A stretch of DNA of 64,000 nt from Laetmonice hystrix (taxonomy: Eukaryota): contig OZ249447.1 of NCBI GenBank assembly GCA_965235115.1, positions 13,206,001-13,270,000 on the forward strand, in the 5' to 3' direction. A program made the position numbers and the translations under genes. Below the pieces are notes generated by a model that was given only the letters and a program-made list of their open reading frames with translations, had not been told where the DNA came from and did not search any database. Of the stretch, positions 36,584 to 57,495 are shown one piece after another; positions within the stretch are counted from its first letter, which is position 1; each line of letters starts with the position of its first letter.

Positions 36584-36748
36584 TCAGAAATTGTATGTAA
36601 TTTATGCTGTAATGTAGATACTTTTGACCACTATCAGAAATTGTATGTAATTTATGCTGTAATGTAGATACTTTTGACCACTATCAGAAATTGTATGTAA
36701 TTTATGCTGTAATGTAGATACTTTTGGCCACTATCAGAAATTGTATGA
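36584..36748. repeat. 50-bp tandem repeat, about 3.3 copies
   Basis: Unit tcagaaattgtatgtaatttatgctgtaatgtagatacttttgaccacta at 36584, 36634, 36684 and 36734. Confidence 0.93.
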
Positions 36749-37751: not shown

Positions 37752-39629
37752 TTTGGGATGTTATGGTAGTCAGGGTTCTCCACAGGGTAAAAGGTCGGTG
37801 GTTGGAGAATATAACACTAAAAATCGGGTTCTGTTGGTAAGTAAATCTAAGCACGTCACGGATGTTTTGTAAAGATGATGAAGTTATGTCCTCAGCGTGC
37901 ATGTTGGCTAAAAAAGTAGGCTACGGTACGTTAGAAAATACAGTGTGGAGAACACTGGCTTCGCCAACAATTGTTTAGCCTTACAACAGGTGAACCAGAC
38001 GAGGATTATAATAGGTTTAATTTGTGTGATTCAAACGATTGCGGTTAATTCAATGGAAGCGTTAAAAAACCATTGAGTACAGGTTGTACTATTGCTGCGT
38101 TGCCTCCTTAAAGGGATAGGCCATACATTGTTGTTTATCTATACCGTACATTGTCAAGGGCCAAGAAATAAAGAATTAAGACTGCTCTTAAACTAACACT
38201 GCTTGTCATGTTTTCAACGCGCATGCAGGAACAAAAATTCTTTGCAGAGGAAATGGCGATTCACCGATTCAGTTTCGGTAATTGCACATGCGGTGAAAAC
38301 AAGAAGATCAGCGTCAGTTTTGCTTTTAGGTCGGAAAAATCGGAATGGGTACTTCGCAATCCTTTTGGCAATGTATCTCTTTAAGTGTCGGTAGTGGGCT
38401 AACAATGAAATAAATATTTGGCAACTTAAAACAAAGAGGTAAATGATGTTAATGTTTGGGATCTGAAGAAAACAGATGAACTAGTGTGTGCCTGTGTCTG
38501 CGACCGGATGAATTGATTGTGTGGATATTTGTAGAAGCTGCTGTTTTAATATTTGGTCACTTCTATGAACAGACGGAAGCGATAACGTTTTGTTTTAGGA
38601 AACCTGGTTTCCTATGTGTAATATCCCCGATAACATTTATGATCTCTTGTTTCAGCAATCAGCACGCCCATGACGTTTATGCATTGTGTTTGTGTGTGTG
38701 TTCCCCTTTATAAAAGTGAACTCTATGTGTTAACGCTTGGATATGATGTTTACAGTGTGGCTGACCCAAACTCTGACCCCTGGACACTAACAGGTCCCAT
38801 GCTTGAATCTAACCCTAATAAACTTATGGTAAACGTAGGAGGAATAATAAAAATTGAATTCAAGAATTAGTTTGGCCTCTCTTTGAACGTCAAAGGCGTC
38901 ATCCGTAGCCAGATATAGGATGTCAGTTGACAGGGTTGTTTGTGAAAGTGTCAGAAGTACCACTCCTCATATTGAACATGAGCCGACCGAGAAAAAAAAC
39001 TTGTATAATTGCATCATTAAATCTCCAGCAATTTTAAACATTTGCGTAGAAAAGGGTTTTTCATTTTATAAGTTGTTAATTGGGAAAGCTGGGTAGCTCT
39101 GCTAATTGGTTGAGCCTTGGAAAATTAGCAAAGAGCTTTACCGCAGGGTAATAGTAATGTAAGCAACGCATGAAAAAGGAGAGTTTTGCGTGATTCTAGG
39201 ATTCTTCATGGCATGTAAACAATTAGTGAGAGTGAAAGAGCTACAAATCATGAAGGCAGTCAAGGTAGCCTTGCCCCACACTCAGTCTGAGGCTGTACCC
39301 AACTCTTGATGTTATAGGTATGGGTGAAGTCTCGGACTGCCCCGTGTACTATTACAGACAAGATTACTATCGATAAATGGGAGAAAGGGGGCGGTAGACA
39401 AAGTGAAAAAGAAATGTTTTTCATTTGTGCTCCATCTCACCGAACCTGTCACAGTGACAGGTTTACTGAATTCAAAAAGTGTTAATCAAATTGCCATTAT
39501 AAGAAGATGCGCAATTGATTATAATTAAAGTCAAATTACGCCAATCCTGCAGCCCGGTCACCTCGCCAGTTTATATTGTACCGATTTTCAAGTTCTTCTC
39601 TTCCCTGTCCAAGTGATGTTGGTCCAGTG

Positions 39630-40042
39630 ATTTACTGGCTACAGGGTGTTGTCAGATTTACTGTATATAGGGTCTTGCCATCAGATGTACTGTATACAGG
39701 GTGTTGCCATCAGATTTACTGTATTCAGGGTGTTGTGAGATTTACTGTATACAGGGTGTTGCCATCAGATTTACTGTATACAGGGTGTTGTCAGATTTAC
39801 TGTATACAGGGTGTTGCCGTCAGATTTACTGTATACAGGGTGTTGCCATCAGATTTACTGTATTCAGGGTGTTGTGAGATTTACTGTACATGTTATATTC
39901 AAGGTGTTGTCAGATTTACTGTATACAGGGTGTTGTCAGATTTACTGTATACAGGGTGTTGCCATTAGGTTTACTGTATTCATGGTGTTGTTAGATTTAC
40001 TGTATACAGAGTGTTGCCATCAGGTTTACAGTATACAGGTTG
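39630..40042. repeat. 26/29-bp minisatellite ending just before the exon B acceptor
   Basis: Units cagggtgttg(cca)tcagatttactgtata. Confidence 0.92.
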
Positions 40043-40058
40043 TTGCTTGTCATTTCAG

Positions 40059-40163
40059 GAACTGATGAAGAAGCAAGACGTTGCACGGCACGCTCAGATG
40101 GAGGTGGATAAGATGCGGCGAGAGGCTGGCACAGAGGCTCTGCAGGCTATGATAGAAAGCAAG
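40059..40163 (+). CDS. ERC1: ERC/ELKS coding exon B (35 codons, ELMKKQ...EALQAMIESK), phase 0-0
   Basis: Acceptor catttcag|GAA and donor AAG|gtgggt. ALQAMIESK resembles vertebrate ALQTVIEMK (recalled). Confidence 0.9.
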
Positions 40164-41871
40164 GTGGGTCGGCACTGGGGTCCTGCAGGTCATGATAGAA
40201 AGCAAGGTGGGTCGGCACTGGGGTCCTGCAGGTCATGATAGAAAGCAAGGTGGGTCGGCACTGGGGTCCTGCAGGCTGTGATAGAAAGCAAGGTGGATTG
40301 GGACTGGGGTCCTGCAGGCCGTGATAGAAAGCAAGGTGGGTCGGCACTGGGGTCCTGCAGGTCATGATAGAAAGCAAGGTGGGTCGGGACTGGGGTCCTG
40401 CAGGCTATGATAGAAAGCAAGGTGGGTCGGCACTGGGGTCCTGCAGGTCATGATAGAAAGCAAGGTGGGTCGGGACTGGGGTCCTGCAGGCTATGATAGA
40501 AAGCAAGGTGGGTCGGCACTGGGGTCCTGCAGGTCATGATAGAAAGCAAGGTGGGTCGGCACTGGGGTCCTGCAGGTCATGAAGCAAGGTGGGTCGGCAC
40601 TGGGGTCCTGCAGGTCGTGATAGAAAGCAAGGTGGGTCGGCACTGGGGTCCTGCAGGTCGTGATAGAAAGCAAGGTGGGTCGGCACTGGGGTCCTGCAGG
40701 CCGTGATAGAAAGCAAGGTGGGTCGGCACTGGGGTCCTGCAGGCCGTGATAGAAAGCAAGGTGGGTCGGGACTGGGGTCCTGCAGGTCATGAAGCAAGGT
40801 GGGTCGGCACTGGGGTCCTGAAGGTCATGATAGAAAGCAAGGTGGATTGGGACTGGGGTCCTGCAGGCCGTGATAGAAAGCAAGGTGGGTCGGCACTGGG
40901 GTCCTGCAGGTCGTGATAGAAAGCAAGGTGGGTCGGCACTGGGGTCCTGCAGGTCATGATAGAAAGCAAGGTAGGTCGGCACTGGGGTCCTGCAGCTAGG
41001 TCATGATAGAAAGCAAGGTGGGTCGGCACTGGGGTCCTGCAGGTCATGATAGAAAGCAAGGTGGGTCGGCACTGGGGTCCTGCAGGTCGTGATAGAAAGC
41101 AAGGTGGGTCGGCACTGGGGTCCTGCAGGTCATGATAGAAAGCAAGGTAGGTCGACACTGGGGTCCTGCAGCTAGGTCATGATAGAAAGCAAGGTGGGTC
41201 GGCACTGGGGTCCTGCAGGTCATGATAGAAAGCAAGGTGGGTCGGCACTGGGGTCCTGCAGGTCATGATAGAAAGCAAGGTAGGTCGACACTGGGGTCCT
41301 GCAGGTCATGAAGCAAGGTGGGTAGGCACTGGGGTCCTGCAGGTCATGATAGAAAGCAAGGTGGGTCGGCACTGGGGTCCTGCAGGTAATGATAGAAAGC
41401 AAGGTAGGTCGGCACTGGGGTCCTGCAGGTAATGATAGAAAGCAAGGTAGGTCGGCACTGGGGTCCTGCAGGTCATGATAGAAAGCAAGGTGGATCGGGA
41501 CTGGGGTCCTGCAGGCTGTGATAGAAAGCAAGGTGGGTCGGGACTGGGGTCCTGCAGGTCATGATAGAAAGCAAGGTGGGTAGGCACTGGGGTCCTGCAG
41601 GTCATGATAGAAAGCAAGGTGGGTCGGCACTGGGGTCTTGCAGGTCATGATAGAAAGCAAGGTAGGTCGGCACTGGGGTCCTGCAGGCTGTGATAGAAAG
41701 CAAGGTGGGTCGGCACTGGGGTCCTGCAGGTCATGAAGCAAGGTGGGTCGGCACTGGGGTCCTGCAGGTCGTGATAGAAAGCAAGGTGGGTCGGCACTGG
41801 GGTCCTGCAGGTCGTGATAGAAAGCAAGGTGGGTCGGCACTGGGGTCCTGCAGGCCGTGATAAAAGGCAAG
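40140..41871. repeat. 43-bp minisatellite, about 40 copies, derived from the exon B/intron junction
   Basis: Unit ctgcaggtcatgatagaaagcaag|gtgggtcggcactggggtc. The first copy is the genuine exon end and donor. 38-bp and 47-bp length variants recur. Confidence 0.97.
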
Positions 41872-41966
41872 ATCAACATCAGCCAGCCAGACGAAAAAAA
41901 AGCGGAATCTTGTTTTACTCAAACCTCCCAAAGTGAGCTAACGTTCTCTTATTTACTCTTCAACAG

Positions 41967-42122
41967 GACATGCACGTGAACTCTCTGGAGATGGAGGTGA
42001 AGCTGCTGGAGGACGAGTTGCTCCGGTTACGGGAGGAAGGAACCATCAACGGTCATGATGCCCGAAACGGAAACCTGGAAACGGAAACCCTGAGGAGTCA
42101 GGAGAAACTTCTCAAGGCCAAG
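41967..42122 (+). CDS. ERC1: ERC/ELKS coding exon C (52 codons, DMHVNSLE...EKLLKAK), phase 0-0
   Basis: Acceptor ctcttcaacag|GAC and donor AAG|gtgagt; in frame with both neighbours. Confidence 0.9.
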
Positions 42123-42576
42123 GTGAGTGGTGTTCACAGTAAGTGGTCCAGAGATCTCGAACCTAACCTCCGATTTCTTTCAGACCTCCGTCTGTTGAGG
42201 AATAGGACCCTATAGAATCGATCGCAGCCCTCTTACCCCCAAGGTCAGATTGACTTGCTGGACAATTCGGACAATTCAGCCAGGACAACTAGACAACCGC
42301 ATGAGTGTGCGCCACATTGACCAGCAGTTAGCTGTGGACTGACCGGGGTAGAGTCGAACAAAGTGGAATCCAATCTCTGGGCCCCTGCGGCCCAGTGTGA
42401 GACGGGCATAAAGAAACGTAGATAAGAGAGAAGAAATATAAGATAGCGACTCGGATGTTCCTTGTGTAGTAACCCTGCATGTATTTCTAGGATCCGGTCG
42501 TATCGGTTCAAACACCACCTGCGGTTGGGAGACTCCCCCTTCCCGAATTCTCCTAACAAGCAATGCTTTGTTTCAG

Positions 42577-42744
42577 ATTGAGAACTTGAAGGCCGAACTG
42601 GGCCGTAAAGACACGGAGCTGTGCGGATTGCGTGCCCAGGTGGAATCGTTACAACGGCAGGGTTCGGACCACCAACAACACATCATGGTACTCCGTGAAC
42701 AGATCACAGCCAAGGATCAGCAGGCCAGCATGATCCAGGCAGAT
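42577..42744 (+). CDS. ERC1: ERC/ELKS coding exon D (56 codons, IENLKAELGRKDTEL...SMIQAD), phase 0-0
   Basis: Acceptor tttgtttcag|ATT and donor GAT|gtcagt. Contains the ELGRKDTEL and HIMVLREQITAKDQ motifs. Confidence 0.92.
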
Positions 42745-42817
42745 GTCAGTATACTCGCCTTTCTACCACTCTTCTTGGACTTTTCACCACCGAAAGAGAA
42801 TTTTGTGCAATTGCCCA

Positions 42818-42969
42818 TGCGACGTCCATGCGATTTTTGATTTAATGGGGAATTTTACTCTGTAATTTTTCATGGCTGGCCTTCCCTGTTTCTAGAAATG
42901 AGTTCCATCCTTTAATCTCAAAATCACAGTAAAATAAAAGGGCGATGTCAAAATCGCATGGACGTCGCA
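42818..42969. mobile_element. Small MITE-like foldback element
   Basis: Perfect 20-bp inverted repeat tgcgacgtccatgcgatttt / aaaatcgcatggacgtcgca, with further imperfect internal symmetry. No TSD recognised. Confidence 0.55.
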
Positions 42970-43723
42970 AGAACAGTCGCCTTAATTGAAACAGTCCTTA
43001 AGTCGCCTCTGGACTTGAGGGTGAATCTTGTGTAAGTCAGCAATCACTCACACTTGTCAATCAGTCAACCAGTCAGTAAGGCAGATAATCATGCGAAATA
43101 TACAGCGATAAAATCAATACTGAGCAAGGAAGACAATTTGGGTAAAAGGGAGGCTATGTGTTTGTTCTGTCGGGTTTGAGATGGGCATCAGGTCCCAGGG
43201 GGAATTTAAGGGATACCGCCTCGGGTAGCGACCTGATGTTGCCATAGATACGGACGCTGCATGGATACCGATTGTGGTTGCCAGTCTGGAAGGGGGCCCG
43301 CACTCTGACAGATGGCGCATCTGTTGACAGGCCCGCAGCTGGCAAGGCCTCACTGTACTGAGAAATCCTGGAAAAGGGCACTCGATTTTTTTTTCAAACT
43401 TAGGAGTTCGGTGAGGAGGGGCAGGGAGGATACATCAGCCGGTGGTAGACGGCTAACTGAGGACATGGACAGGCGAGGAGTAGTTACAGGCCTTGTACGG
43501 GGTCTGGTAATGCAATCAAAGTGGCTATCTCATTGGTTTAGGTCGAGGACAGCATGGTGAGCGGCTGCTGCTAGGTGGGGGAGGCACTGATAGGCACTGA
43601 GCTGGCCACAAATAGCACTAGCTTCTGCCATGAAAAGAAAGGAGAAAGGCTTTAACCGTCAGCGACGACGGCAGTCTGAAAGTGAGGATCGAACGTCTCG
43701 GCCCCAGTGAGTGCGTGTTCCAG

Positions 43724-43737
43724 CCACTAGATGGCGC
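43724..43737 (+). promoter_or_regulatory. CTCF-like motif CCACTAGATGGCGC
   Basis: Matches the CCASYAGRKGGCRS consensus and lies in a CpG-rich intronic patch. Confidence 0.4.
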
Positions 43738-44287
43738 GCGCCGCAACAAACGCTGATGTACGTCTGATGCGATCTGTGGCACACGTGCTGAAACGTGAGG
43801 GGTAATTACACGTGATTAACAGGCCAAGAACAAATTAATCCCGTTGTTTGGTGATTACCGACGTCCTGGCGGCAAACGCTGCCGAACTGGATGTGTAATG
43901 GGTTGTTGTAGAATGTGATTACACAGACGGAATATTTTCTTCACGTCTCGAGTTGACAGACAGCTGCCGTAGTTGGCGCGGACGGGGTGGGATGATTGTG
44001 TCATGGCTACTTGTATGGATTCACCGTTAGACCACAGCGATATCCAGGCAGATCGCTATAATCGTCAAGATGTCACTGGAATCCATTGTTATGTTGACTC
44101 TGGTTTTGATGATAAAAGAAACATTAACTATAATATGAAAATATTACGTCAAATCAGACAAATCTGTTGTCGGTATTTTTCTAAAGGCGGTACATTAAAA
44201 CGACCAACGACTATAGTACTGACTATAACTAAGGTGTCCCCTCGGAGTATTATTTTGGTCTGATGTTGTTTATATTTGTGTTACCAG

Positions 44288-44455
44288 TTGGACCTGATGC
44301 GAGACCGACTAGAAGAGAAGGATGGGGTGATTGAGAAGAAGGGTAAACAGATTCTCCACGTGCAGGGTGACAGGAAGAGGGTGGAGGGTGAGCTGGCGGA
44401 GGTACGGGACCACATGGACATCAAGGAGCGTAAAATCAACGTACTCATCAGGAAG
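44288..44455 (+). CDS. ERC1: ERC/ELKS coding exon E (56 codons, LDLMRDRLEEKD...KERKINVLIRK), phase 0-0
   Basis: Acceptor tgtgttaccag|TTG and donor AAG|gtctgt. Contains the RLEEK and DIKERKINVL motifs. Confidence 0.92.
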
Positions 44456-45408
44456 GTCTGTATCGTATATAGTCCTGATTTAATCATGACCTACATTTTT
44501 TTCCGTTTTTTTCTTTTTTTCGAATTGATATATCAACCCTAACGTTGTTCTTATGACAAAGAAGGAAACTCGTCTGTTGATTTAACGTTTTTAGAGCGAG
44601 CATTTCTCAGTCGGTATTATAGTTATCAAAACCGAATCTGTCAATGCCAGCATTCTCGTAATGTAAATTGAGCCTGCAGTTAGTGAGTTCTTAAATGAGT
44701 GCTATTGACACTTCATCATTTGAAATTTTAATTTAATTATTACGCGTGTGACATAAGAACAGTCCAGTTAACCACAGAGGCCGTAAAATCGGAACAGAAG
44801 GCAGTGACAAACGTGGGAAACGTGGGAGGGTCTGTCACCTTGACCTAATTATAAACCTATTATTTGTTAGCCAAGGGCGTACAAATACAAAGCCCGCTGC
44901 AGGAGAGAGGGAGAGAGAGGTAAAAAGTGCTTCATCAATTGATGAGTCTAGTGCTGCCATTATGAAACTAATTACTGAGATCCGCGCAGAGACTGCCCGA
45001 AGCGGTCTCATGACAAACTGAACCTGTATCAAGGATGATAAGGCTCCGGCATCAGTTCAGACGGTGGAGTTTTTATTCTCCAGATCTACGGGCCTCAAGC
45101 TAGGAGAGAAAGTCTGTGATGACATGTAGCTCGTTCGTCTGTCAACAAAACTGAGTGACTTTTCCTGAGATGCGGGATATTACTTTCTATTGTCAATATC
45201 TGGGGCAGCTTGTCCCTCATGGTGGATGCTTTTAGTTTGGTTTCAGTGAGGAACCCCAAAAATCAACATGGATTTAAAGGGTCTGATAACTATCTCAGAT
45301 CAATTCGATAAAAGTCAAATATCGAGTGGACCCAAAAAAACTCTTTTCTTGACTGTAACTTCTACAATTTCTATCCCAATGTCATAATATTTGGAATTTC
45401 ATTTTTAG

Positions 45409-45563
45409 ATTGAGAATTTGGAGGAGTTAGTACGAGACAAGGAAACCCAGGTATCAGCAATGAAACAACGACTTAATTCAATCCATGCCGATCATAATTC
45501 CTCGGATTCTACAGTTACCGCGCTCGAGGATGCACTCAACGACAAGGAAAAACAGATTGAGAG
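45409..45563 (+). CDS. ERC1: ERC/ELKS coding exon F (155 nt, IENLEELVRDKE...LEDALNDKEKQIE[R]), phase 0-2
   Basis: Absent from the ORF track because it has no start codon; read by hand. Acceptor catttttag|ATT and donor AG|gtaaaa. Confidence 0.92.
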
Positions 45564-45722
45564 GTAAAATATTTGGAGTTAAATGATTTACATATCATTG
45601 CGGCAGAACACCGACCCTGTGCCGATATACGATAAGGTTATTATGAACCCAGAATGGACCTGAAAGGTCAACCCCAGTTATTATAAACCTGTTACTTACT
45701 ATGTGAACCATTCCTGCCCCAG

Positions 45723-45846
45723 ACTGAAGGACCAGCGGGACCGGGTGGAGCGGGAGCACTCGGAGGAGATGGAGCTCCTCCAGCGAGCTAACAAGGAACA
45801 CAAGGCCAAGATTGACAGTCTTTGTACCGAGCTGGACGAGAAACAG
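45723..45846 (+). CDS. ERC1: ERC/ELKS coding exon G (124 nt, [R]LKDQRDRVERE...ELDEKQ), phase 2-0
   Basis: Acceptor ttcctgccccag|A completes the AGA codon from exon F; donor CAG|gtgaga. Confidence 0.92.
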
Positions 45847-46039
45847 GTGAGAACTCCGGAAAACGTTGTGTACAGGTTGTACCTCTGATGTAAGCTGAAT
45901 TGATGAGGCCCAGTGTGTTCCTGTCACTGGGTGTCCTAGGCCTGGGTCACAAGCAAAGTCAATTTTAATTAACTTGGAGTCAATTTTACTTGGGTCTTAT
46001 TGGTTAAAGTGGATCGCAAGTTAATTAAATTGGACTTTG

Positions 46040-47043
46040 CTTGTGAACCGGGCCCTGGACCTGGAGTACTTGTTCAAGGGAACTTCTTCTGTGCATTGAT
46101 GGGTCCTCGTGGTTCATGTCCCATTGTGAGGACCTCTTGGTGTCCTGGACCTGGGATACTTGTGTAAGGGAACCTGTTATGTGAATTGATGAGTCCTCAT
46201 GGTTCATGTCCCATTGAGAGGACCTCTTGGTGTCCTGGACCTGGGATACTTGTGTAAGGGAACCTGTTATGTGAATTGAGTCCTCATGGTTCATGTCTCA
46301 TTGTGAGGACCTCTTGGTGTCCTGGACCTGGGATACTTGTGTAAGGGAACCTGTTATGTGAATTGATGAGTCCTCGTGGTTCATGTCCCATTGTGAGGAC
46401 CCCTTGGTGTCCTGGACCTGGAATACTTGTGTAAGGGAACCTGTTATGTGAATTGATGAGTCCTCATGGTTCATGTCCCATTGTGAGGACCTCTTGGTGT
46501 CCTGGACCTGGGATACTTGTGTAAGGGAACCTGTTATGTGAATTGAGTCCTCATGGTTCATGTCTCATTGTGAGGACCTCTTGGTGTCCTGGACCTGGGA
46601 TACTTGTGTAAGGGAACCTGTTATGTGAATTGAGTCCTCATGGTTCATGTCCCATTGTGAGGACCTCTTGGTGTCCTGGACCTGGGATACTTGTGTAAGG
46701 GAACCTGTTATGTTAATTGATGAGTCCTCATGGTTCATGTCCCATTGAGAGGACCCCTTGGTGTCCTGGACCTGGGATACTTGTGTAAGGGAACCTGTTA
46801 TGTGAATTGAGTCCTCATGGTTCATGTCCCATTGTGAGGACCCCTTGGTGTCCTGGACCTGGGATACTTGTGTAAGGGAACCTGTTATGTGAATTGATGA
46901 GTCCTCGTGGTTCATGTCCCATTGTGAGGACCTCTTGGTGTCCTGGACCTGGGATACTTGTGTAAGGGAACCTGTTATGTGAATTGATGAGTCCTCATGG
47001 TTCATGTCCCATTGTGAGGACCTCTTGGTGTCCTGGACCTGGG
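46040..47043. repeat. 90/87-bp minisatellite, about 11 copies
   Basis: Unit gaggacctcttggtgtcctggacctgggatacttgtgtaagggaacctgttatgtgaatt(gat)gagtcctcatggttcatgtcccattgt. Confidence 0.96.
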
Positions 47044-47120
47044 ATTGCGAACCTCTTGATCTGAACTGAGGTGGTTTCATGCCACATTGCACTGACTTGT
47101 GGCGTTGTGAACGTTTACAG

Positions 47121-47261
47121 AACAGTGTGTTAGAGATGCGAGAGGAAGCATCCGAGATGCGAGCGGAGAAGATGCGGCGAGACACACGGATCAGTCAACT
47201 GGAGCTCGCCATGTCTCAGAAATCAGCAGATATCCAGCAGCTTTCAGACCAGATCAAAAAG
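47121..47261 (+). CDS. ERC1: ERC/ELKS coding exon H (47 codons, NSVLEMREEAS...SDQIKK), phase 0-0
   Basis: Acceptor acgtttacag|AAC and donor AAG|gtaaag. Confidence 0.9.
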
Positions 47262-47478
47262 GTAAAGTCAGAGTACTTAATCGTTTGGCCTAAACAAATC
47301 ATAACCAGAAGACATGTTAGTAAGAAACTTGCACTATATGTGGTAACTAATACTTAACTATTACTGAGTGGATATTGCATGAGGAAATAAGATCAAGATG
47401 GTGTTATGCCGTAATAATATGTCCAAATTACAGGAAGAACATGTACAACATAACACCATCGAGACTTTTTATTAACAG

Positions 47479-47678
47479 TTGGAGGATGAAAAGGCAGTCG
47501 TCCTCAGCCGGAGTTCGCAGGAGACAGAAGCTCGCACGGCTGATCTAGAGAATGAATTGAGGACTCACAAGGAGGCGACTGCCAAGACCCAGACTGAGGT
47601 GGACCGACTCTTGGAGATACTGCAGCAGATGGAAGTAGAAAAACATGAGAAGGATAGACAGATCAAGGAACTGCAGGA
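47479..47678 (+). CDS. ERC1: ERC/ELKS coding exon I (200 nt, LEDEKAVV...TQTEVDRLLEILQQMEVEKHEKDRQIKELQ[E]), phase 0-2
   Basis: Acceptor ttattaacag|TTG and donor GA|gtaagt. Contains the EVDRLLEIL motif. Confidence 0.93.
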
Positions 47679-47831
47679 GTAAGTGGGGTCACGTCAGAGA
47701 TATCAAATAGAATTTTATTTTAATTGCTACTAATTTTTGTTCTCAATTTTTCTAACCAAACTTTACTACCTTTAGAATGTACTTGCCCGGTTTGCCGTCC
47801 TAATCGGCGGTCTGTGATTGGTGGTGTACAG

Positions 47832-47967
47832 ACAGGTGAAGGAGAGCAAGACAAAGGCCGGGTCACTGCGCAGGAGTCAGCAGACGGAGAAGAAGAAAAG
47901 TGCACAGATGTTAGAGGAAGCGAGGAAGCGAGAGGAGGAGGTTAGCGAGGACATCTCTCAGCTTAAG
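47832..47967 (+). CDS. ERC1: ERC/ELKS coding exon J (136 nt, [E]QVKESKTK...EKKKSAQMLEEARKREEEVSEDISQLK), phase 2-0
   Basis: Acceptor gtgtacag|A (weak pyrimidine tract) completes GAA; donor AAG|gtaagg. Confidence 0.92.
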
Positions 47968-48858
47968 GTAAGGCCACAACAAATTGTCACTGGGACCGTG
48001 CAGTTTTCACATCCATGCAGTTTGAAGTGTCTCTGCCACCACTGGCTCACGGGAATGAAATTAGGCCAGGACATTGGTAGTAAATGTTGGTGAAATTCGA
48101 TTTCATTGATTTTTTTTTTTTTTTTTTCAAAATTTAGAATGTTCCTATGTATAATGGTAACCATCGTTGACCTCAGAATGTAGAAGACGGCCATCAAGTT
48201 GCTGGCCTGAAAGCTCTTGTAACGACACCAAGTATTCACACACACCCTCGGTATGGGGGTAGTCTGATGTTGTGTTTTTACGTACTGGTGCTGTCTTTTG
48301 TTGGTGAAATGTTGTACCAGTATCTCCGGATCTCCATGAAAGTAAAAATGAATACTGCGATTGACATATTAGGTGTCAGTTTTCCGGTTATATTTCATGT
48401 TTCCCTTAAAACGGATGATGCTTTTTTTAAGATATACTTAACATACAGGAAATTCAAGGCGAAACGTCAAATATTAAAGATATCCTCTGAGAGCCATATA
48501 AGCTCATAATAAAAGAGTTTTTCCATTTTTGGAAAAATATAAAGGAAATTATAGGACTTTGTGCACACCCCCTTTTTTCTACTATTTTGTTTAACCTGCG
48601 GTTAGTTTCACCACAAATTACCTGAAGATGAATGCAGTAGATTGACAAACAGTTCCCGATTCTGTTCAAAAGGCGCCATTGTATTGGTCCCGTGATTTGT
48701 TAATAACCAAATTTGAGCACTGTGCAGCATGCGCATGTGTCAGTGCTGGCTTTATCCTGGAGGGGGCGCTGTAGTGGCCGGTGTATGCTGTGTGTGTGGA
48801 CTGCGCACTGATTGGGTTGTTTCTCCACTGTTGTGCCATTTGTTGCTAACACCCCCAG

Positions 48859-48897
48859 GACCGGAGAGGGCACATTGATGGAGCAAACAATCTATGG
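48859..48897 (+). CDS. Candidate 39-nt in-frame cassette exon (DRRGHIDGANNLW) between exons J and K
   Basis: Branch-like GCTAAC followed by acccccag acceptor, 13 open codons, and donor TGG|gtaatt. Phase 0-0 matches the flanking exons. No homology support. Confidence 0.45.
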
Positions 48898-49902
48898 GTA
48901 ATTCACGCCTTCATTGCCGCTGAATGCCAAAATATGTGTCTGCAAGCTTGTTACTTGTTACATCACTTATGTATGGTCACTCATCACGCAAACACCCCCC
49001 CCCCTCCCCCAACCCTCCTTTCGTCTCCCTCCCTCCCCTTAGCTTATATCAGATATTTACTGTATCTTATGTCAGCAGAATAGGAGTTAGCTCACATTTC
49101 AAATCTTATTCTAGTATTTCCAGTCAAGATCTACAATGTAGTTATATACCATGACTCACCCGTATTCTACAGTGCCTTTTTACCCCGCCCAATCTTCCAT
49201 ATTGTTCTAAAGATCTGTCAAGCCTGTCGTAGGCCTACACCGTACACGTGGCTAGGGGTGGTCGTAGTGAGCTCAGTGTACATATATATGTCAAGATTTC
49301 AGCAGGCACCAATGTGTCCAGTACTTGATATAACACTGAACCGCTTGACCTAGCAACATCACTGACTCCAGCCCCACCGGGAGATCATCCATAGAAACTA
49401 CTAGAGCCATACCCCACAACCCTGCCCATCCTTCGTCCTGCTTCTATCCCTCATGTCTACAGGTAGATTTAGCAGGGATTGTATGGTTGAGATGTATCCC
49501 CTCCTTCCGTATCTGGTGGCATGGTGTCTGTCACAGTCAGTCGGAACTCCTTGGCCTTTTCCGCCCGTTTCCGTCATCTTAGAAATAACCTTAAATAACG
49601 TCCAAGTACCTACTTTCGTTATTTATACCGATTTAAGATTTAATCAATTCGTCGTTTGCATCGGTCTCGTCATCATGCTTTGCAAACTGACTTCCGACGC
49701 GAAAGGAACTGCTGACAATAATAAATTTATTAATCAAATTTATTCTGAAAACTCCGTACGTGCTAGGTTATTTCTGATGGAAATTGGTGTGTGGAGTTAC
49801 GAACATGTCACACAATGTGTATCGTTAGTAGACTCATAGCTCACGTCCACAGAAAATGGCATCGCACTAAATGAAACTATCATTTGACGTCTCCACATAG
49901 CA

Positions 49903-50216
49903 CTTGATGTGAACGATATGAAAGATGTAATCTAGAACTTGATGTGAACGATCTGAAAGATGTAATCTGGAACTTGATGTGAACGATATGAAAGATGTAA
50001 TCTGGAACTTGATGTGAACGATATAAAAGATGTAATCTGGAACTTGATGTGAACGATATGAAAGATGTAATCTGGAACTTGATGTGAACGATATGACAGA
50101 TGTAATCTGGAACTTGATGTGAACGATATAAAAGATGTAATCTGGAACTTGATGTGAACGATATGAAAGATGTAATCTGGAACTTGATGTGAACGATATG
50201 AAAGATGTAATCAGGA
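49903..50216. repeat. 35-bp minisatellite, about 9 copies
   Basis: Unit gaacttgatgtgaacgatatgaaagatgtaatctg. Confidence 0.95.
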
Positions 50217-51319
50217 AGACAGCGGCATGGTAGCTTGCAGTCAGTAGCGGTGTAGACAGAGCAGCGCTCACCTTTTGTACCTAGAGATTTTCCTCTATAG
50301 GCCTACGAACGTGTACCTACATATTTTTTTATTAACGAATACTCCCATACATCCTTAGATCTATTCTGTTTGGAAAGCATTGCCTCAGCCCCACAATTAA
50401 AATCTTTTTGTTTTAGTTTTTTATGCTTTATAGGCCTATATCTATAATCATGGTTTAACTTTTGTATTTATTTTTGTTTTTAATAAAAATAGAAGGTATT
50501 GTTTTTACATGCCTGTGTTCTGTAGAAATGGATTGTCTGTCACGTTATAATATTGAAACCAGTTAACTGATATTTACCAGATTTGGGATGTATTATTTTT
50601 TTAAGGACGGATCTTTGATACATTTTTTCGATGTCTTGAGATATCTTTGAGCATTACTTGGGCTTCATGAACTGTGTTTAACGTGTTATGAGACATGTTA
50701 TGAAATTAGAAAGAATTAGGCCTAAAGGCAATTAAATACGTAGCCGGTAATGGTAAAGTAATTATGTCGTATGTTTCCAGTATTCAGGACTATGCTTACC
50801 GATCCAGATCTCGTTTGAGTCAGCGGTAACGACTATAAATAGAAATACCCAAAAAGGGAAATATCGGCAGAGCTGGAACGAATTCGAATTCCATGCTCAC
50901 CAGAGGGGCTGGTTGCGTGTTTGGCCGCAAGGTGTCGCATGAGTTGTGTTGGCTGCTGTAGAGTCGCCGTCAACGTTCCACTAACCCCTCTATCCCCGCT
51001 CTGTATCGACGGGTGTCTATGGTTTGGTGCACATGGACTAACGTTATGTTGCTGTCTGACTAACAATGCCTTTCTTATGTTAGCATTCGCTCATTGGTAT
51101 GTGGATCGCAAAAAGTCGTCGGTGTATTGACCTGGTTTTGTTTTTTGTCTTTTTCTTTCCCCTTACTCTAACTTCTGGTTCAACCAACTTTTTTGGGTTG
51201 GTTGGTTGTGTTCGCTCCCCTCTTTACTTGCCTTGGTTGGTCACCCTTTGCGTTTCTTAGCACCGTTTTGGTTTTCCGTTTTGAGTTGATCGTTTTGTTG
51301 ATTTTTCTATGATTTTTAG

Positions 51320-51451
51320 AACGTAATTAAGCAGAAAATGGAACGAATTGAGGAATTGGAGGAAGCACTTCGAGAGAGTGTGAAGATAACAGCCCAACGT
51401 GAGATGGTGATGGCTGAGCAACACATGAAGATCGAGGACACCGAGAAACAG
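51320..51451 (+). CDS. ERC1: ERC/ELKS coding exon K (44 codons, NVIKQKMERIEELEEALRESVKITAQREMV...TEKQ), phase 0-0
   Basis: Acceptor gatttttag|AAC and donor CAG|gtgagc. Contains the strongly conserved RIEELEEALRESV motif. Confidence 0.94.
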
Positions 51452-51894
51452 GTGAGCGTTCTTCTCAGACACCTGGCGGCCAACTGGGGCATAACTCGTG
51501 TGCTGCCATCTAGTGCCGATGGCCAAAGGTTGGCGGTTCACTCGGCAAATCAGAATTTAATCACTAACTTTTGTAATTCTCAAATACATGGGTTACTTTT
51601 AACAATAAAGAGAGCCAAACTTTCTGGGAAATGTTTCTCAAAACATGCCCAACTTCTGTACACTATGAGATCGTCCGTATGTTAGCCTCATGTCCGTAAT
51701 TCATTCTTAGCAGAGGTTGCTGATGGATACAGATGTAAGTTATTTGTTACGCTCTGTTTCCAATCTTGACACTGCAAGGACGGGGTAAGGACATGTTCTG
51801 TCCCAAGTGTTATCTGTTGGCAGACACGAGAAGACGTGTTTTCCTCCTTACTTGAGGAGATGAAAGAGGCATAGAATATAGGCCTACTTCAAAT

Positions 51895-52054
51895 GTACAG
51901 TCCGGACACCCCCACCCCACCCCTGAATATAGTTCAGTACAGTCCGGACACCCCCACCCCACCCCTGAATATAGTTCAGTACAGTCCGGACACCCCCACC
52001 CCCCACCCCTGAATATAGTTCAGTACAGTCCGGACACCCCCACCCCACCCCTGA
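51895..52054. repeat. ~42-bp tandem repeat, about 3.7 copies
   Basis: Unit gtacagtccggacacccccaccccacccctgaatatagttca. Confidence 0.92.
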
Positions 52055-54679
52055 AAAAGAAACGCGTCAAAGCTCCGTCATGCAGTTATTGCACAGCATT
52101 TGAAACTAAATGAATCAACACTCGGTGATGTTAAACATGAGGTAGAAAGAATCATATAACCGTGCATTATTGTTCTCATAACAAAGAATGAGAATAATCC
52201 ATGTGATAGAAACGATAAAATATTGCCATGCGAATTACATCCCGAAACGAATGTAGTCAAATGAAACAGAAAAGAATGCACATAGTTATTTATTTTAAAG
52301 TGCGTTTTGTTAAATATACCACATATATTTTTAATTTAGCTGTATTTTTATAGTTAACTTTTGTTACCTCTCGTTCAGTTTATCAGTATGTTACAGGACA
52401 GACTCTAAAGATTAGATATTTAGCGTCTGCTGATATCATTCACAACTTATCTAAATAGGTTGATGCATACGACCATGATTGATTGTAACACAAGTGATGC
52501 ATTGTTCTCAAATATTACTTCACCAGGCTAGCCCGACGCAGGGTAAAAGACGCCTCAATATATTTACGTATACCTTGGTCTGATGTTCTTTGCATGGTCA
52601 ACTGATCCAGAGTCGCCCACACTGCCATCTAGTGGTCATGTTTTGTAGCTTGGCATGAGGGAATCACTGTCCACGGACTCTTACCCTCGAATAGATTAGA
52701 CGCTTCTGAGTGAATCTCACCACTTACATACGACCTGTCTCATGTATAGCTGTTGTCTAAATGTTATAATTATACAGGTCCTATCAGTCCACAACCGTTG
52801 GCCCTTGAAATATGTGAACAACATATCAAATGGAAAATTCAAATCATTTACCAGCAATATGATCAAGTATCAATAGTTTTGTGTATGGTGAGAAGAAAGT
52901 GGCTAAGGAGGTCCAGTTTGTTAATTAGGATGTATAGTTATAGTCCATGATACTCTTGAAACATTTTGAATAGGATCATGCTTGGGTCAGAACTGTCAGT
53001 AGTTTAGCATTTATCCAACTCTACCCTTAGAGCGCCCCCCCCCCCCCCCGCCGCCCACCTCCTTTTATCGTAGGTCACAGATTTATACTCTCCACCGAAC
53101 TTTCTACATTTATTTTAGTGTAGTATTCACACACTCTATCCAGATGGTAGGATATGGAGTGACGACAGTCGAGGCATACATGCACTCTGTCACCTGTGCC
53201 ATCTTTGACTGGTATGGAAGGATGTTTCTGTTAAGTAGATCAAATTGGCATTATCGGCACGGTTTCCTTGCCAGCAGCTTCAGGGATATCGGTAATTGTA
53301 ATTGGTTGAAACAGCTATAGCTGATTCTTTTTTTTTATATATATAAAGGGGGGGGGGACACAGAAACATCACAGTAGCTAAAAATCAGAGGTGGCACGGG
53401 TGGTACTGCAGAAATCCAGTAGAATTTGTTCACTATGTTAATTATCATTAGTGTGTTTTTTTTCTATTGACCGTATCAATCTCATTATCATTATTATCAT
53501 TGTACTGGTTAAGTGGCCCTGAAGTCGTAAAGTTGTTGTATTGAATAATCCCTCAAGATGATTTTTTTCAATGTTTTTTTTCCTATGCTGTAAGTCTTGT
53601 TTTCATTACACATGTGTAGTACAAATTTATGGCGTACACATTCGCTTTATTTCTGATATTTTTTAAGCTTTCTTGGTCCTTTCTTCGTACATGTGCAATT
53701 AACCAAATAATTTTTAGTAGTAATCTTTTTTTTCTGTACTTCAAACTCGAGCAGTGTATATATTTTCTCAGTCATCTTCTAATAATTAAAGAAAGAACTT
53801 AAGTAGGGTATTGCAATAAGGATTATTAAATACACCTTTTAGTGCAGGTGTATTCAGACAACAAAGTGCGATGGGACCCAAAGATAAAAATTTTCTCCGA
53901 ACCTATTAACCCAAGGTAGAGTAGTATCTCTAGTGTAGTAGATGGTTTGACAGGCTAGAACCCTGCTCTTTGACATTACGCCTTGCCCTATTCCAAGGAA
54001 GACCTTTGAAGATGTACAATACTTTACTAAATTAGCCCTTTTACATTTTAGTTCATGCAAGGTGTTATTGACCTGTGTCCTTTCACAAACATTTTTATTC
54101 TCATAAGTAGGTTAGTTTTCTTTTTGTTAACTTTTTAAATCCTATTTTGGTTCTTATCATTTATAAAATTCAAATGCAACTTGTTTTAGCTTATTCCTGG
54201 ACACTGCGATAGACGTTCCTGATAAAGGAAGTGAAAATGTTGCTAAATTGTGGTCTGATTTCTTCAGTAGCATAGGCCTTTCCCGCCAAAACTCTGTGTT
54301 CTTTCTTTAAACATATGCTGCAATGTAAAGTTCAGATTCACTGCTTCGTGCTTCGTGTACAGTACAGGCTAAAGATTGGAGTAATCCGTACTACGGTACT
54401 ACGAGCTGTAGAATTCCAAATTTCCTTCATTTATTGGTATTTACAATGTACCGTGTTTTATTAGCAAGATTTTGAAAAAGTGTTAGTTTGGGGTTTTATT
54501 CATTTGCCACCTCGGCCAAAACCATAGGTAGGTCCCGAAACATTTGACAGTGTGTATGGCTGTCAGTACCCAGTTTCATACATCAAACTTTGAGTCCGTG
54601 AAAAACGTCTCCAACCTCCAAGAAACCTGTTAACCTACATTATTCCTCTTTCGTCTGATGAACATAATGGTTGTGGCAG

Positions 54680-54840
54680 ATGAAAGTCGTTACGGAAGAA
54701 CTGGAGAATATTGAGCGGGAAGGTAGAGAGAAGAACCGAACTATCAGCAACCTGAACGACGAACTGGAGACGAAGGAGGGCAAAGTGAAAACCATGCAGG
54801 TTGAACATCGCAAACACCTTGAGGGTCTCTATGAAATGAA
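54680..54840 (+). CDS. ERC1: ERC/ELKS coding exon L (161 nt, MKVVTEELE...EHRKHLEGLYEM[K]), phase 0-2
   Basis: Absent from the + strand ORF track; read by hand. Acceptor ttgtggcag|ATG and donor AA|gtaagt. RKHLE..EMK motif. Confidence 0.9.
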
Positions 54841-55094
54841 GTAAGTCATCGACTCTAAACGATAGAGTCAGCGTGATATCACTAAGTGAAGTCAAACTCA
54901 ACTTGCCATTTCAACTTGGGTTATTGCCCAAGCAGTGAAAACATGACAATCGGCATCAATTTAAAGGGAGAAGTTTCTGTAATATATATATTTGTAGACA
55001 CTTTATTTTACGAGTGTCGATGTCGATGACGTCTAATATTACTATACGACTGCCCACGTGTCCAGTAACAGGGTTATACTATACACGTCTATAG

Positions 55095-55245
55095 GCAGGA
55101 GGCGATCGTGGCGGCCATCTCGGAGAAGGACGCCCACATAGCCCTGCTGGAGATGGCACCGGGACCCAAGCCTGTCGCGTCCACGGACGAGGTGGACAGA
55201 CTCAACAAGGAGAAGAACAAACTACAGTCACAACTCAAGGAACTG
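55095..55245 (+). CDS. ERC1: ERC/ELKS coding exon M (151 nt, [K]QEAIVAAISEKDAHIALLEM...LQSQLKEL), phase 2-0
   Basis: Acceptor gtctatag|G completes AAG; donor CTG|gtgagc. Contains the AAISEKDA motif. Confidence 0.93.
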
Positions 55246-55373: not shown

Positions 55374-55460
55374 ACTCAAAGTCGCATGAAACTTCTACAG
55401 AACGAGGAAACTAATGGCAGCGCTGTCGTCAAGTCACTGACCAACGCTCCTCCAGAACAG
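55374..55460 (+). CDS. ERC1: ERC/ELKS coding exon N (29 codons, TQSRMKLLQNEETNGSAVVKSLTNAPPEQ), last shared exon, phase 0-0
   Basis: Acceptor caatttcag|ACT and donor CAG|gtacgc. TQSRMKL resembles vertebrate TQNRMKL (recalled). Confidence 0.9.
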
Positions 55461-56112: not shown

Positions 56113-56139
56113 GAAAAGGAGGCTGGAATCTGGGCCTAG
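56113..56139 (+). CDS. ERC1: Alternative C-terminal exon O: EKEAGIWA* (ERC1b/ERC2-type IWA PDZ-binding end)
   Basis: Acceptor tttcatgtgtag|GAA AAG GAG GCT GGA ATC TGG GCC TAG, in frame with exon N. IWA-COOH is the known ligand of the RIM PDZ domain. Confidence 0.92.
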   Translation, partial: EKEAGIWA

Positions 56140-56223
56140 GGGGCGCCACAAATGGCGACATGGCAGCAGGGGTATGTAGGCCTGTCACTAGTATAAAAAA
56201 AACGCTAGGGGTTAGAGAGATTC

Positions 56224-56229
56224 AATAAA
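56224..56229 (+). terminator. Candidate polyadenylation signal for the IWA isoform
   Basis: AATAAA about 85 nt after the IWA stop codon; motif only. Confidence 0.35.
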
Positions 56230-56857
56230 AAAGAGAGGGGGGTTGTCTAGCCGTGCTGAGTGCCCTATGACTGGGCTTTTATATTGTTGTAGTCGTATCT
56301 TTGCAACAATCACTGGGGAAATTGACTTTCTTCTATATGGGAAAACATGGCGATGTTAATAGTATTGTCAAAATGCACAAAAACATGTTAGCCTTTACAC
56401 TATTACAGTTCTTCATTTAGTCTAAAAATGTGTATTGTCGCATGTTTAGGGTAGGATTTGTATACGCGTAGCTCACATTCTAGAAAACGATGGATAGTTA
56501 TAAGAACAGAAGTCAGATATAGAGTATTATAGTATACATCATGAGTGGAGACGTGAGTATGATGATATCTTTGGGCTCGATACAATGTGCCCTGGTGCCG
56601 TTTACATGTTCCATTAACGTGAATCAAATGGGGAGGAAGAGGAACTAGCTAACTTAATGATAACTGTCTGAACTGAGCTTTCTTGCGGGGCTTTGAATGG
56701 AAATTTTCACGAGCGCATTGGCCCAAACCCAAGTAAAGTGTTGCATAATTGTTCATTTTTACACTGACTGTCTCCCTCGCCGAATAGACTAAAATCTTCA
56801 AGTTAGTGCTGAATGTTGACTAACAAATTGACGGTTTGTTGACGTGATTGGGAGCAG

Positions 56858-57031
56858 GTTGTTCAGGCTATCCGGGGCATGGAATACAGCAAGAAACGTC
56901 TGCGGGCTCTGATCGACCAGCTGGTGGCCACCTGTCTCGATATTGACCCGCAACTGTTAGAGGGACTACCGCGCTTACAGCAGGACTTGGCTGCCAGTCA
57001 CTGCCAGCTGCGCCGGCTGGGGGACACCCAG
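56858..57031 (+). CDS. ERC1: Alternative C-terminal exon P (58 codons, VVQAIRGMEYSKKRLRALIDQLVATCLDIDPQLLEGL...LGDTQ), ERC1a-type
   Basis: Acceptor gggagcag|GTT and donor CAG|gtaacg. Aligns by eye with recalled ERC1a IIQPLLELDQNRSKLKLYIGHLTTLCHDRDPLILRGL. A second in-frame acceptor at 56867 is possible. Confidence 0.8.
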
Positions 57032-57351
57032 GTAACGCCCACAGCAATCCGGCAATATTAAGCTTTAAAAAATCGGAATGTTAATGTCTAAAACATATGG
57101 CCAATTTAAAATTATTTTTTTTATGCCTACTTGTTTGGGTTAATTGTGTTAATTGATGAAATCAATAAGAAAACCTAGTTTAGTAAATCATTAAACAAAA
57201 TTTTTAATGGGGGGGGGGGGAGTCAAGCCTTTTTCTTTCGTACAAAAATGGTTGGAGACTGTTTGATTAGGTAGTGTTCTTTGTGGTTTGGAAACAAGGA
57301 AACGCAATGTCGTTGCTATAAATAACTATTGATTGCCCTGCCCCCTGGCAG

Positions 57352-57495
57352 CTGTTGCAGGAACTAGGTAAGTGCGAGCGTGACTGTAACCGCCTACAGG
57401 ACTACATCAACACCCTGCTGCAGAGAATCCGGGCTGCACAACCAGATAAACTATTCGCTATCATGGAGTGGCTGGACCGCGCCGTGCAGAGATAG
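57352..57495 (+). CDS. ERC1: Alternative terminal exon Q (LLQELGKCERDCNRLQDYINTLLQRIRAAQPDKLFAIMEWLDRAVQR*), FIP-RBD-like ERC1a end
   Basis: Acceptor gccccctggcag|CTG, phase 0 after exon P, stop TAG at 57493-57495. Resembles recalled ERC1a LQDELEKGERDNAELQEFANAILQQIADHCPDIL. Confidence 0.82.
   Translation: MLQELGKCERDCNRLQDYINTLLQRIRAAQPDKLFAIMEWLDRAVQR

What the first reader, a model, noticed from the sequence alone, without database searches (positions are those of the whole stretch)
56113..57495. Invertebrate ELKS gene carries both vertebrate-style alternative C-termini (IWA end and FIP-RBD-like end) in the same exon order
Seen in sequence: exon N (phase 0) can splice either to a 9-codon exon giving EKEAGIWA* or, skipping it, to two further exons (56858-57031, 57352-57495) encoding 105 aa. 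Established knowledge: vertebrate ERC1 makes a brain ERC1b form ending in IWA, which binds the RIM PDZ domain, and a ubiquitous ERC1a form with a longer C-terminus containing a FIP-type Rab-binding domain. C. elegans ELKS-1 ends in IWA, whereas Drosophila Bruchpilot has a different extended C-terminus. Inference: the neuronal versus ubiquitous switch is an ancestral bilaterian feature rather than a vertebrate invention. Annotation pipelines often keep only one end, so this may be unrecorded here.
Basis: partly seen in the sequence, partly recalled or inferred. Interest (0 to 1): 0.75.

Follow-up and report, generated by a model that had tools for sequence, protein, structure and literature searches.

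The report
ELKS gene with two alternative tails
This invertebrate's single ELKS (active-zone scaffold) gene can end either in a tiny stop-carrying exon giving the RIM-binding "GIWA" tail or in two further exons giving a FIP-type Rab-binding-like tail, as in vertebrate ERC1b/ERC1a. Gene models of a ribbon worm already show the same pair, so it is a sound but modest evolutionary point.

Summary
Exon N (55374-55460) ends in phase 0. It can join a micro-exon encoding EKEAGIWA-stop (56113-56139) or two phase-0 exons, P (56858-57031) and Q (57352-57495).

- **The tail is FIP-like.** Exon Q passes Pfam RBD-FIP (31.5 bits, cutoff 23.3). Exon P is a weaker second FIP-like unit.
- **The tail matches vertebrate ERC1a.** P+Q aligns end to end with ERC1a tails at 31-35% identity. 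It is 53-62% identical to nemertean, mollusc and other invertebrate ELKS tails. The branch point (…P-E/D-Q|) is the same.
- **The gene is a single-copy ELKS.** Cast-domain exons run collinearly from 25.9 to 55.2 kb, in a lophotrochozoan-like genome.
- **The IWA exon is probably a cassette.** I place it at 56113-56171, with a GTATGT donor. A relative's transcript carries IWA-stop followed by P+Q as 3'UTR. Another genome has the same N-IWA-P-Q order. In primates the ERC1 IWA exon is a stop-carrying skipped exon.

Limits:
- No RNA data exist for this species, so use of either end, and any neuronal regulation, is untested.
- The pair is not unrecorded. RefSeq Lineus longissimus isoforms X1-X3 carry the FIP tail and X4 carries GIWA.
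- I found no paper discussing this.

Verdict: a real feature, a new member of a known kind, of modest interest.

The parts
25912..55245 (+). Upstream ELKS/ERC coding exons (Cast domain). The blocks found are 25912-26280, 41964-42152, 42574-42756, 44285-44458, 45409-45564, 45721-45861, 47118-47279, 47479-47679, 47821-47970, 51320-51454, 54677-54841 and ~55096-55245. Boundaries are approximate.
   Evidence: tblastn with the L001 ELKS ORF gives collinear hits. Pfam Cast PF10174 hits at 40-84 bits run collinearly over profile positions 117-758 of 766.
55374..55460 (+). Exon N, the last common exon. It has 29 codons, ends ...NAPPEQ in phase 0, and is the branch point of the two C-termini.
   Evidence: It is homologous to ...SAEQ| in Lineus...PSPDQ| in vertebrates and ...SSSEQ| in L003.
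56113..56139 (+). Coding part of exon O: EKEAGIWA plus TAG. This is the RIM-PDZ-ligand type end (B variant).
   Evidence: It is the only GIWA-stop in the window. It parallels EDDGIWA in Lineus X4 and D/E-EEGIWA in vertebrates.
56113..56171 (+). Probable full cassette exon O, 59 nt, with donor GGG|gtatgt at 56172.
   Evidence: Donor seen. The relative's transcript L001 has about 64 nt of IWA exon spliced on to the P exon. L003 has a 62-nt IWA exon with donor GAGG|gtaatg. Inferred for this species.
56224..56229 (+). AATAAA, 85 nt after the IWA stop. It is a possible alternative polyadenylation signal that would make exon O a composite terminal exon.
   Evidence: It is the only such hexamer between exons O and P. 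Function not shown.
56858..57031 (+). Exon P, 58 codons and symmetric phase 0. It is the first FIP-like unit of the A-type tail. Its acceptor is purine-rich and weak.
   Evidence: RBD-FIP 16 bits, E 0.011. The orthologous unit in Lineus scores 32.8 bits. It is skipped in Octopus X2 and a Pomacea model.
57352..57495 (+). Exon Q, 47 codons plus TAG. It is the second FIP-like unit (…LQDYINTLLQRI…P) and the end of the A-type tail.
   Evidence: RBD-FIP 31.5 bits, cutoff 23.3. It aligns with the platypus ERC1a unit that scores 58.9 bits. It is the only copy in the genome.

Best explanation
The stretch is the 3' end of the single ELKS/ERC/CAST gene of a lophotrochozoan-like invertebrate.

After the last common exon (N), a short stop-carrying cassette exon (O) is either included or skipped.
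- Included, translation ends in ...EKEAGIWA, the C-terminal motif that in vertebrates and C. elegans binds the RIM PDZ domain. Exons P and Q then become 3'UTR.
- Skipped, N joins P and Q, adding 105 residues made of two tandem FIP-RBD-like helical units. This is the counterpart of the vertebrate ERC1a/ELKS 'A' tail.

The module (branch residue, exon order, micro-exon, two-unit tail) is orthologous to the vertebrate A/B switch, so it was inherited from the protostome-deuterostome ancestor.

Shown here: the sequence features, the homologies, the same-gene linkage in relatives and the exon order.

Inferred: that both forms are made in this species, that exon O is a cassette here, that inclusion is neuron-enriched, and that the IWA end binds RIM.
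For: - **Exon anatomy and phases:**
- **Gene identity:** Cast-domain exons upstream on the same strand. Single copy in the 627-Mb genome.
- **FIP-like tail:** RBD-FIP hit above the gathering score for exon Q and a weak hit for exon P. A profile of the tails finds only Rab11-FIP1/2/3 RBD chains as its top eight PDB hits, at E 0.006-0.03. The ESM Atlas nearest cluster is 'RB6I2 (fragment)' with RBD-FIP.
- **Homology to known tails:** P+Q aligns over 102 of 105 residues with ERC1a tails at 31-35% identity, and with Lineus, Solemya and Octopus tails at 53%. In the database search, FIP-ended vertebrate ERC1 scored 105-120 bits at 99-100% coverage, against 68-70 bits at 37% coverage for IWA-ended forms. 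The branch point is identical in paired isoforms of platypus, squirrel, goby and Lineus.
- **Same gene, cassette exon:** transcript L001 has the ELKS ORF ending in GIWA-stop, about 35 more nt, then P+Q. Genome L003 has N, IWA exon, P and Q in the same order with AG/GT sites. The primate ERC1 IWA exon is a PTC-containing skipped exon that rises during neuronal differentiation (PMC11310779).
- **Selection:** DNA runs of one sample show 34 variants in about 3.0 kb of non-coding sequence. The 464 coding nt of N, O, P and Q carry one variant, which is synonymous.
Against: - No RNA run of this organism was found. The three holders are DNA, with even depth over introns and no splice joints. No junction has therefore been observed here.
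- Inclusion of exO puts the stop more than 50 nt upstream of two junctions, which would predict NMD sensitivity. An AATAAA at 56224 offers a different route to the IWA form.
- The exon P acceptor is weak.
- In the window's own clade, one transcript (L004) ends ...DDDGL-stop, not GIWA, and shows no P/Q downstream. Another contig (L002) has P and Q fused and no IWA exon. The module is therefore not universally kept.
- No canonical poly(A) hexamer lies within 3.5 kb after the exon Q stop.
Confidence: 0.8

Rival explanations
1. The IWA form is made by alternative polyadenylation, not by a cassette. Exon O would be a composite terminal exon ending after the AATAAA at 56224. The switch would then be splice-versus-polyadenylation competition.
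For: One AATAAA lies 85 nt after the stop and 53 nt after the putative donor. This route would avoid the NMD problem of a stop-carrying cassette.
Against: The relative's transcript L001 splices the IWA exon on to P. A good GTATGT donor lies at 56172, at the same distance as the donor in L003. Primates use a skipped exon. The two routes are not mutually exclusive.
Confidence: 0.25
2. Only one of the two ends is used in this species. The other would be an unexpressed relic, either a decaying IWA micro-exon or an unused P/Q tail.
For: No RNA evidence exists here. Relatives have lost or altered one end: molluscs lack IWA in all models seen, L004 ends DDDGL, and L002 lacks an IWA exon.
Against: Both ends keep open frames, canonical splice sites and family-typical residues. 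No polymorphism falls in exons O, P or Q although the flanking introns are variant-dense. The GIWA motif is exact.
Confidence: 0.1
3. P and Q belong to a separate downstream gene encoding a small FIP-like protein.
For: Gene callers on other assemblies emitted P/Q as stand-alone small ORFs of 84-254 aa.
Against: Those ORFs are artefacts of prokaryote-style calling on eukaryotic DNA or cDNA. In L001 they sit on the ELKS mRNA. RefSeq models of Lineus, Octopus, Littorina and Babylonia join them to Cast-domain exons. Exon P starts at an acceptor in phase with exon N, with no upstream ATG exon.
Confidence: 0.02

Closest known systems
Vertebrate ERC1/ELKS1 C-terminal A/B variants (ERC1a = ELKS1-A, ERC1b = ELKS1-B). 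ERC2 has the same pair.
   Same: The branch residue is the same (…P-E/D-Q|). Both have a 7-9-codon micro-exon ending GIWA-stop. Both have a tail of about 105 residues with two FIP-like units, the second matching Pfam RBD-FIP. In both, the IWA exon lies upstream of the tail exons and is a skipped, stop-carrying exon (review PMC5830537).
   Different: Tail identity is only 31-35%. The window keeps Y-I-N in the second unit, where most tetrapod ERC1a have F-A-N. The genome has a single gene instead of two paralogues. Tissue regulation is unknown here.
RefSeq isoforms of Lineus longissimus ELKS (XP_064632221/222/224 with the FIP tail; XP_064632225 ending EDDGIWA)
   Same: It is an invertebrate gene model with both ends diverging after …AEQ. 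Tail identity to the window is 53%.
   Different: It comes from a different phylum-level lineage in the tree. These are predicted models, not described in any paper I could find.
Rab11-FIP C-terminal Rab-binding domain (Pfam PF09457; PDB 2HV8, 2D7C, 2GZD, 3TSO, 4D0G)
   Same: Both are C-terminal amphipathic helices with the …LQDY-I/A-x-x-L/I-L/I-x-R/A-I…P-x-x-L pattern. Exon Q is above the Pfam threshold. The tail profile's best PDB hits are all FIP RBDs.
   Different: The PDB hits are weak (E 0.006-0.03). Here there are two tandem units instead of one. No evidence exists that this tail binds Rab11. The mapped Rab6 site of ELKS lies elsewhere, in the common coiled coil (PMC10267580).
C. elegans ELKS-1 and Drosophila Bruchpilot
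   Same: The N-terminal and central Cast coiled coils are shared. C. elegans also ends in GIWA (PMC5830537).
   Different: According to the review, C. elegans is described with the IWA end only, and Brp has an unrelated plectin/myosin-like C-terminus. The window's gene has both vertebrate-type ends.

Membership tests
ELKS/ERC/CAST | Cast coiled-coil domain (PF10174) along most of the protein | tested here: met
   Five exon translations hit Cast at 40-84 bits (cutoff 29.1), collinear over profile positions 117-758 of 766. There are 8-10 collinear tblastn blocks against L001 and Lineus ELKS.
ELKS/ERC/CAST | C-terminal GIWA motif that binds the RIM PDZ domain | tested here: met
   The motif EKEAGIWA-stop is present at 56113-56139 behind a strong acceptor. 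Binding itself is not testable with these tools.
Vertebrate-type A/B C-terminal switch | Both ends diverge after the same residue of the last common exon | tested here: met
   Paired isoforms of platypus, Ictidomys, Eucyclogobius and Lineus diverge after …DQ/…EQ. The window diverges after …PPEQ.
Vertebrate-type A/B C-terminal switch | The IWA exon is a stop-carrying cassette lying upstream of the tail exons | tested here: inconclusive
   The order N-O-P-Q and a donor at 56172 are present. Cassette use is shown only in a relative's transcript and in primates. No RNA exists for this species.
Vertebrate-type A/B C-terminal switch | Neuron-enriched B form and ubiquitous A form | not testable with these tools
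   No RNA-seq run of this organism was offered.
FIP-RBD (Pfam PF09457) | Sequence match above the curated Pfam gathering score, at the protein's C-terminus | tested here: met
   Exon Q scores 31.5 bits against the 23.3 cutoff. Exon P scores 16 bits, below the cutoff, but its Lineus orthologue scores 32.8 bits.
FIP-RBD (Pfam PF09457) | Similarity to solved Rab11-FIP RBD coiled coils | tested here: inconclusive
   The tail profile's top eight PDB hits are all Rab11-FIP1/2/3 RBDs, but at E 0.006-0.03. No structure was predicted.
FIP-RBD (Pfam PF09457) | GTP-dependent binding of Rab11-family GTPases by a homodimer | not tested
   No complex prediction was run, and no eukaryotic Rab reference is available in the tool. 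The literature I searched does not report Rab11 binding by the ELKS A tail.

The most novel reading that the evidence does not exclude
The stop-cassette switch between a RIM-PDZ ligand and a tandem FIP-RBD tail is a regulated, neuron-versus-non-neuron switch that already existed in the protostome-deuterostome ancestor.

In invertebrates the tail also keeps the Rab11-FIP-like Y-I-x motif that most tetrapod ERC1a have changed. It might therefore be a working Rab11-family binding site, making non-neuronal ELKS a dual Rab6/Rab11 effector.
Probability: 0.2. Interest if true: 0.6.

Novelty: new member of a known kind. Interest (0 to 1): 0.35.

Why it matters
The reviews I read describe the ELKS A/B C-terminal variants as a vertebrate feature. 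They describe invertebrate ELKS through C. elegans (IWA only) and Drosophila Brp (unrelated tail).

The whole module is intact in a lophotrochozoan-type genome, and RefSeq models of a nemertean carry the same pair. The switch is therefore ancestral, and worm and fly are the derived cases.

This gives an invertebrate setting to ask two questions. The first is what the poorly understood A tail does. The second is whether neuron-specific inclusion of the stop exon is ancient.

It is an incremental evolutionary point, not a new mechanism.

Tried and rejected
- **RNA junction counting.** Only three runs of one sample hold the stretch. They are DNA, with even depth of 30-57x over introns and no splice joints.
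- **Exon Q against 1.84 billion representatives.** This returned only eight hits. Six were short stand-alone ORFs without names, and two (P0001, P0003) were spurious repeat or giant proteins.
- **Single-exon search of PDB sequences.** Nothing relevant came back. Only the tail profile reached Rab11-FIP.
- **Third database search, Octopus tail only.** It found cephalopods alone. I therefore could not establish the presence or absence of the FIP tail in echinoderms, hemichordates, amphioxus, arthropods or cnidarians.
- **P0006 contig.** It could not be fetched because the file was too large.
- **Wang et al. 2002** (PMC137906, the original ERC1a/b paper) is not held.
- **The SRA run of L001** could not be tied to an organism.
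- **Joined P+Q peptide.** It has no reference, so it was used only inside scripts. Exons were sent singly to the large tools.
- **Rbfox or Nova motif enrichment around exon O.** There is one TGCATG at 55955, it is not conserved in L003, and I did not pursue it.
- **Structure and complex prediction.** I judged these uninformative for a short coiled coil and did not run them.

Full report
**1. The observation**

I read 55200-57800 on the + strand.
- Exon N is 55374-55460, with acceptor tttcag| and donor CAG|gtacgc. It encodes 29 codons ending …NAPPEQ.
- Exon O starts at 56113 behind a pyrimidine-rich acceptor and reads EKEAGIWA then TAG.
- Exon P is 56858-57031 and has 58 codons.
- Exon Q is 57352-57495 and has 47 codons plus TAG.
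- All junctions are phase 0.

GIWA-stop occurs once in all six frames of the window. Composition-matched shuffles give 0.01 per window.

**2. The gene**

A 1074-residue ELKS ORF from a related invertebrate transcript (L001, see section 4) gives collinear tblastn blocks on the + strand from 25.9 kb to 55.2 kb. Five of these exon translations hit Pfam Cast (PF10174) at 40-84 bits, in order along the profile from position 117 to 758 of 766.

In the window's own 627-Mb, 35-contig assembly, both a Cast exon and exon Q are found exactly once. This is therefore the single ELKS/ERC gene of this genome.

A maximum-likelihood tree places the stitched window protein with two unlabelled transcriptome sequences (support 98/97). 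That group sits among brachiopod, nemertean and mollusc ELKS, far from vertebrate ERC1 and ERC2. Identity is 45-51% to lophotrochozoan proteins and about 40-45% to vertebrate ones. 'Invertebrate' is thus supported. The phylum is unknown, because my labelled set had no annelids, echinoderms and so on.

**3. The long tail**

Exon Q alone passes the Pfam RBD-FIP gathering score (31.5 bits against 23.3, E 1.6e-7). Exon P hits the same model weakly (16 bits, E 0.011). In the Lineus orthologue it is the P-unit that passes (32.8 bits). In the L001 species and in platypus ERC1a it is the Q-unit (33 and 58.9 bits). The tail is therefore two tandem FIP-like units, one per exon.

Further support for the FIP-like reading:
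- A profile of 13 tails finds Rab11-FIP1/2/3 RBD chains as its eight best PDB matches. The scores are weak (E 0.006-0.03), and both units find a match.
- The ESM Atlas nearest cluster is 'RB6I2 protein (fragment)', that is ERC1, with RBD-FIP in all members.

In a script I joined P and Q and compared them with all fetched proteins. P+Q aligns over residues 1-102 of 105 with the extreme C-terminus of vertebrate ERC1a forms, at 31-35% identity and E 2e-13 to 1e-10 in that small database. It aligns with Octopus, Solemya and Lineus tails at 53% and with the L001-species tail at 62%.

In the large database search with the Lineus C-terminal 201 residues, FIP-ended vertebrate ERC1 scored 105-120 bits at 99-100% coverage. 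IWA-ended isoforms of the same genes scored 68-70 bits at 37% coverage.

**4. Same gene, same order, same branch point**

Paired isoforms of platypus, a squirrel, a goby and Lineus diverge immediately after …(P)-D/E-Q. One form continues with D/E-rich GIWA and the other with the tail. The window diverges after …PPEQ in the same alignment column.

A Logan transcript contig (L001, 4262 nt) carries the ELKS ORF ending …DRDGIWA-stop. About 35 further nucleotides follow, and then, in another frame, the P and Q homologues without an intron. In that animal the IWA exon is therefore an internal cassette, and P/Q are on the ELKS mRNA.

A genomic contig from another assembly (L003) shows the same order, all with AG/GT borders:
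- exon N, ending GAACAG|gt
- a 62-nt exon reading DDAGIWA-stop and ending GAGG|gtaatg
- exon P
- exon Q

In the window, the sequence after the stop runs 32 nt to GGG|gtatgt at 56172. That gives a 59-nt cassette of the same size class. For primates, PMC11310779 describes the ERC1 event as a PTC-containing skipped exon whose inclusion rises during neuronal differentiation.

An AATAAA at 56224 leaves open a composite-terminal-exon route to the IWA form.

**5. What is already recorded**

The review PMC5830537 describes A (long) and B (PDZ-binding) variants for both vertebrate genes. It describes C. elegans ELKS as ending in GIWA and Brp as having an unrelated C-terminus. It says nothing of an invertebrate A tail. 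Searches combining ELKS/ERC1 with FIP-RBD, GIWA and invertebrate, or Rab11-FIP found no paper on it.

The databases do hold it.
- RefSeq Lineus longissimus isoforms X1-X3 end in the FIP tail, and X4 (XP_064632225.1) ends …AEQ-EDDGIWA.
- Solemya, Littorina, Babylonia, Pomacea and cephalopod models carry the FIP tail.
- Lingula and Tubulanus models end in GIWA.

The finding is thus a further instance, not a first record. Whether this genome's own annotation has both ends could not be checked.

**6. What is not shown**

No RNA run of this organism was offered. The three holders, all one sample, are DNA. Depth is even at 30-57x across introns, and there are no splice joints. Use of either end, the cassette-versus-poly(A) question and any tissue bias therefore remain inference.

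Weak support for constraint comes from the same DNA runs. They show 34 variants in about 3.0 kb of non-coding sequence. The 464 coding nt of N, O, P and Q carry one variant, which is synonymous. About five would be expected under uniformity (my arithmetic).

The module is not universal. All mollusc models seen lack IWA and have another short end. One transcript of the window's clade ends …DDDGL-stop. One compact contig has P and Q fused and no IWA exon.

**7. Mechanism and verdict**

- Most likely (0.8): a conserved stop-cassette switch gives either a RIM-PDZ-ligand end or a tandem FIP-like tail, orthologous to vertebrate ELKS B/A.
- The function of the tail is unknown even in mammals. The Rab6 site lies in the common coiled coil (PMC10267580), and the review notes only that MICAL3 binding may extend into the tail.
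- Rab11-type binding by the tail is speculation based on the retained Y-I-x motif.
- The feature is real and the evolutionary inference is sound at the level of gene structure.
- It is a new member of a known kind, already present in gene models of another invertebrate. Interest is modest.

Noticed in passing
window 55657-55872: A MITE-like element with 49-nt, 98%-complementary terminal inverted repeats lies in the N-O intron. DNA contig depth there is about 1e5 against about 40 in the flanks, so it is a very high-copy family. One contig in run X3 joins 55640 to 55881, which suggests an allele lacking the insertion.
   Followed up: partly
window 55456-55658: The exon-N donor region (…CAG|GTACGCCACCTAGTGAGAGATAATACAA…) is repeated in tandem three to four times with a unit of 52-62 nt. 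This creates extra GTACGCC donor-like sites just inside the intron. It recalls the other note on this window about a minisatellite of splice donors at 40140-41871.
   Followed up: no
P0067, P0041, P0024, P0020, P0136 (mollusc ELKS models): Bivalve and gastropod ELKS models that lack the FIP tail do not end in GIWA. They end in a different conserved short motif (…DPY-V/M/I-LTAP-x-SL-D/E-S). Cephalopods have yet other short ends. Molluscs may have replaced the RIM-PDZ ligand exon.
   Followed up: no
P0142 (Octopus bimaculoides X2), P0162 (Pomacea): These models join exon N directly to the Q unit and skip the P unit. Exon P in the window is 174 nt and phase 0-0, so a third, shorter tail (N-Q) is possible here too.
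   Followed up: no
L004:3280-3360: A transcript from the window's own clade (P0159) ends …NEQ-DDDGL-stop instead of …GIWA. No P/Q homologue appears in its 1.6-kb 3' region.
   Followed up: partly
L002:2554-4652: This compact ELKS locus or contig has the P and Q units fused without an intron. No GIWA-stop exon lies in the 1.7 kb between exon N and P.
   Followed up: no
window 57496-61000: There is no AATAAA or ATTAAA within 3.5 kb downstream of the exon Q stop codon. The A-form 3'UTR is either long or uses a non-canonical signal.
   Followed up: no
P0132 (Lingula anatina ERC2 isoform X2): This isoform diverges at the same branch point (…PDQ|) but ends GWPKK. It is possibly a mis-modelled skip of the IWA exon into unannotated tail exons.
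   Followed up: no
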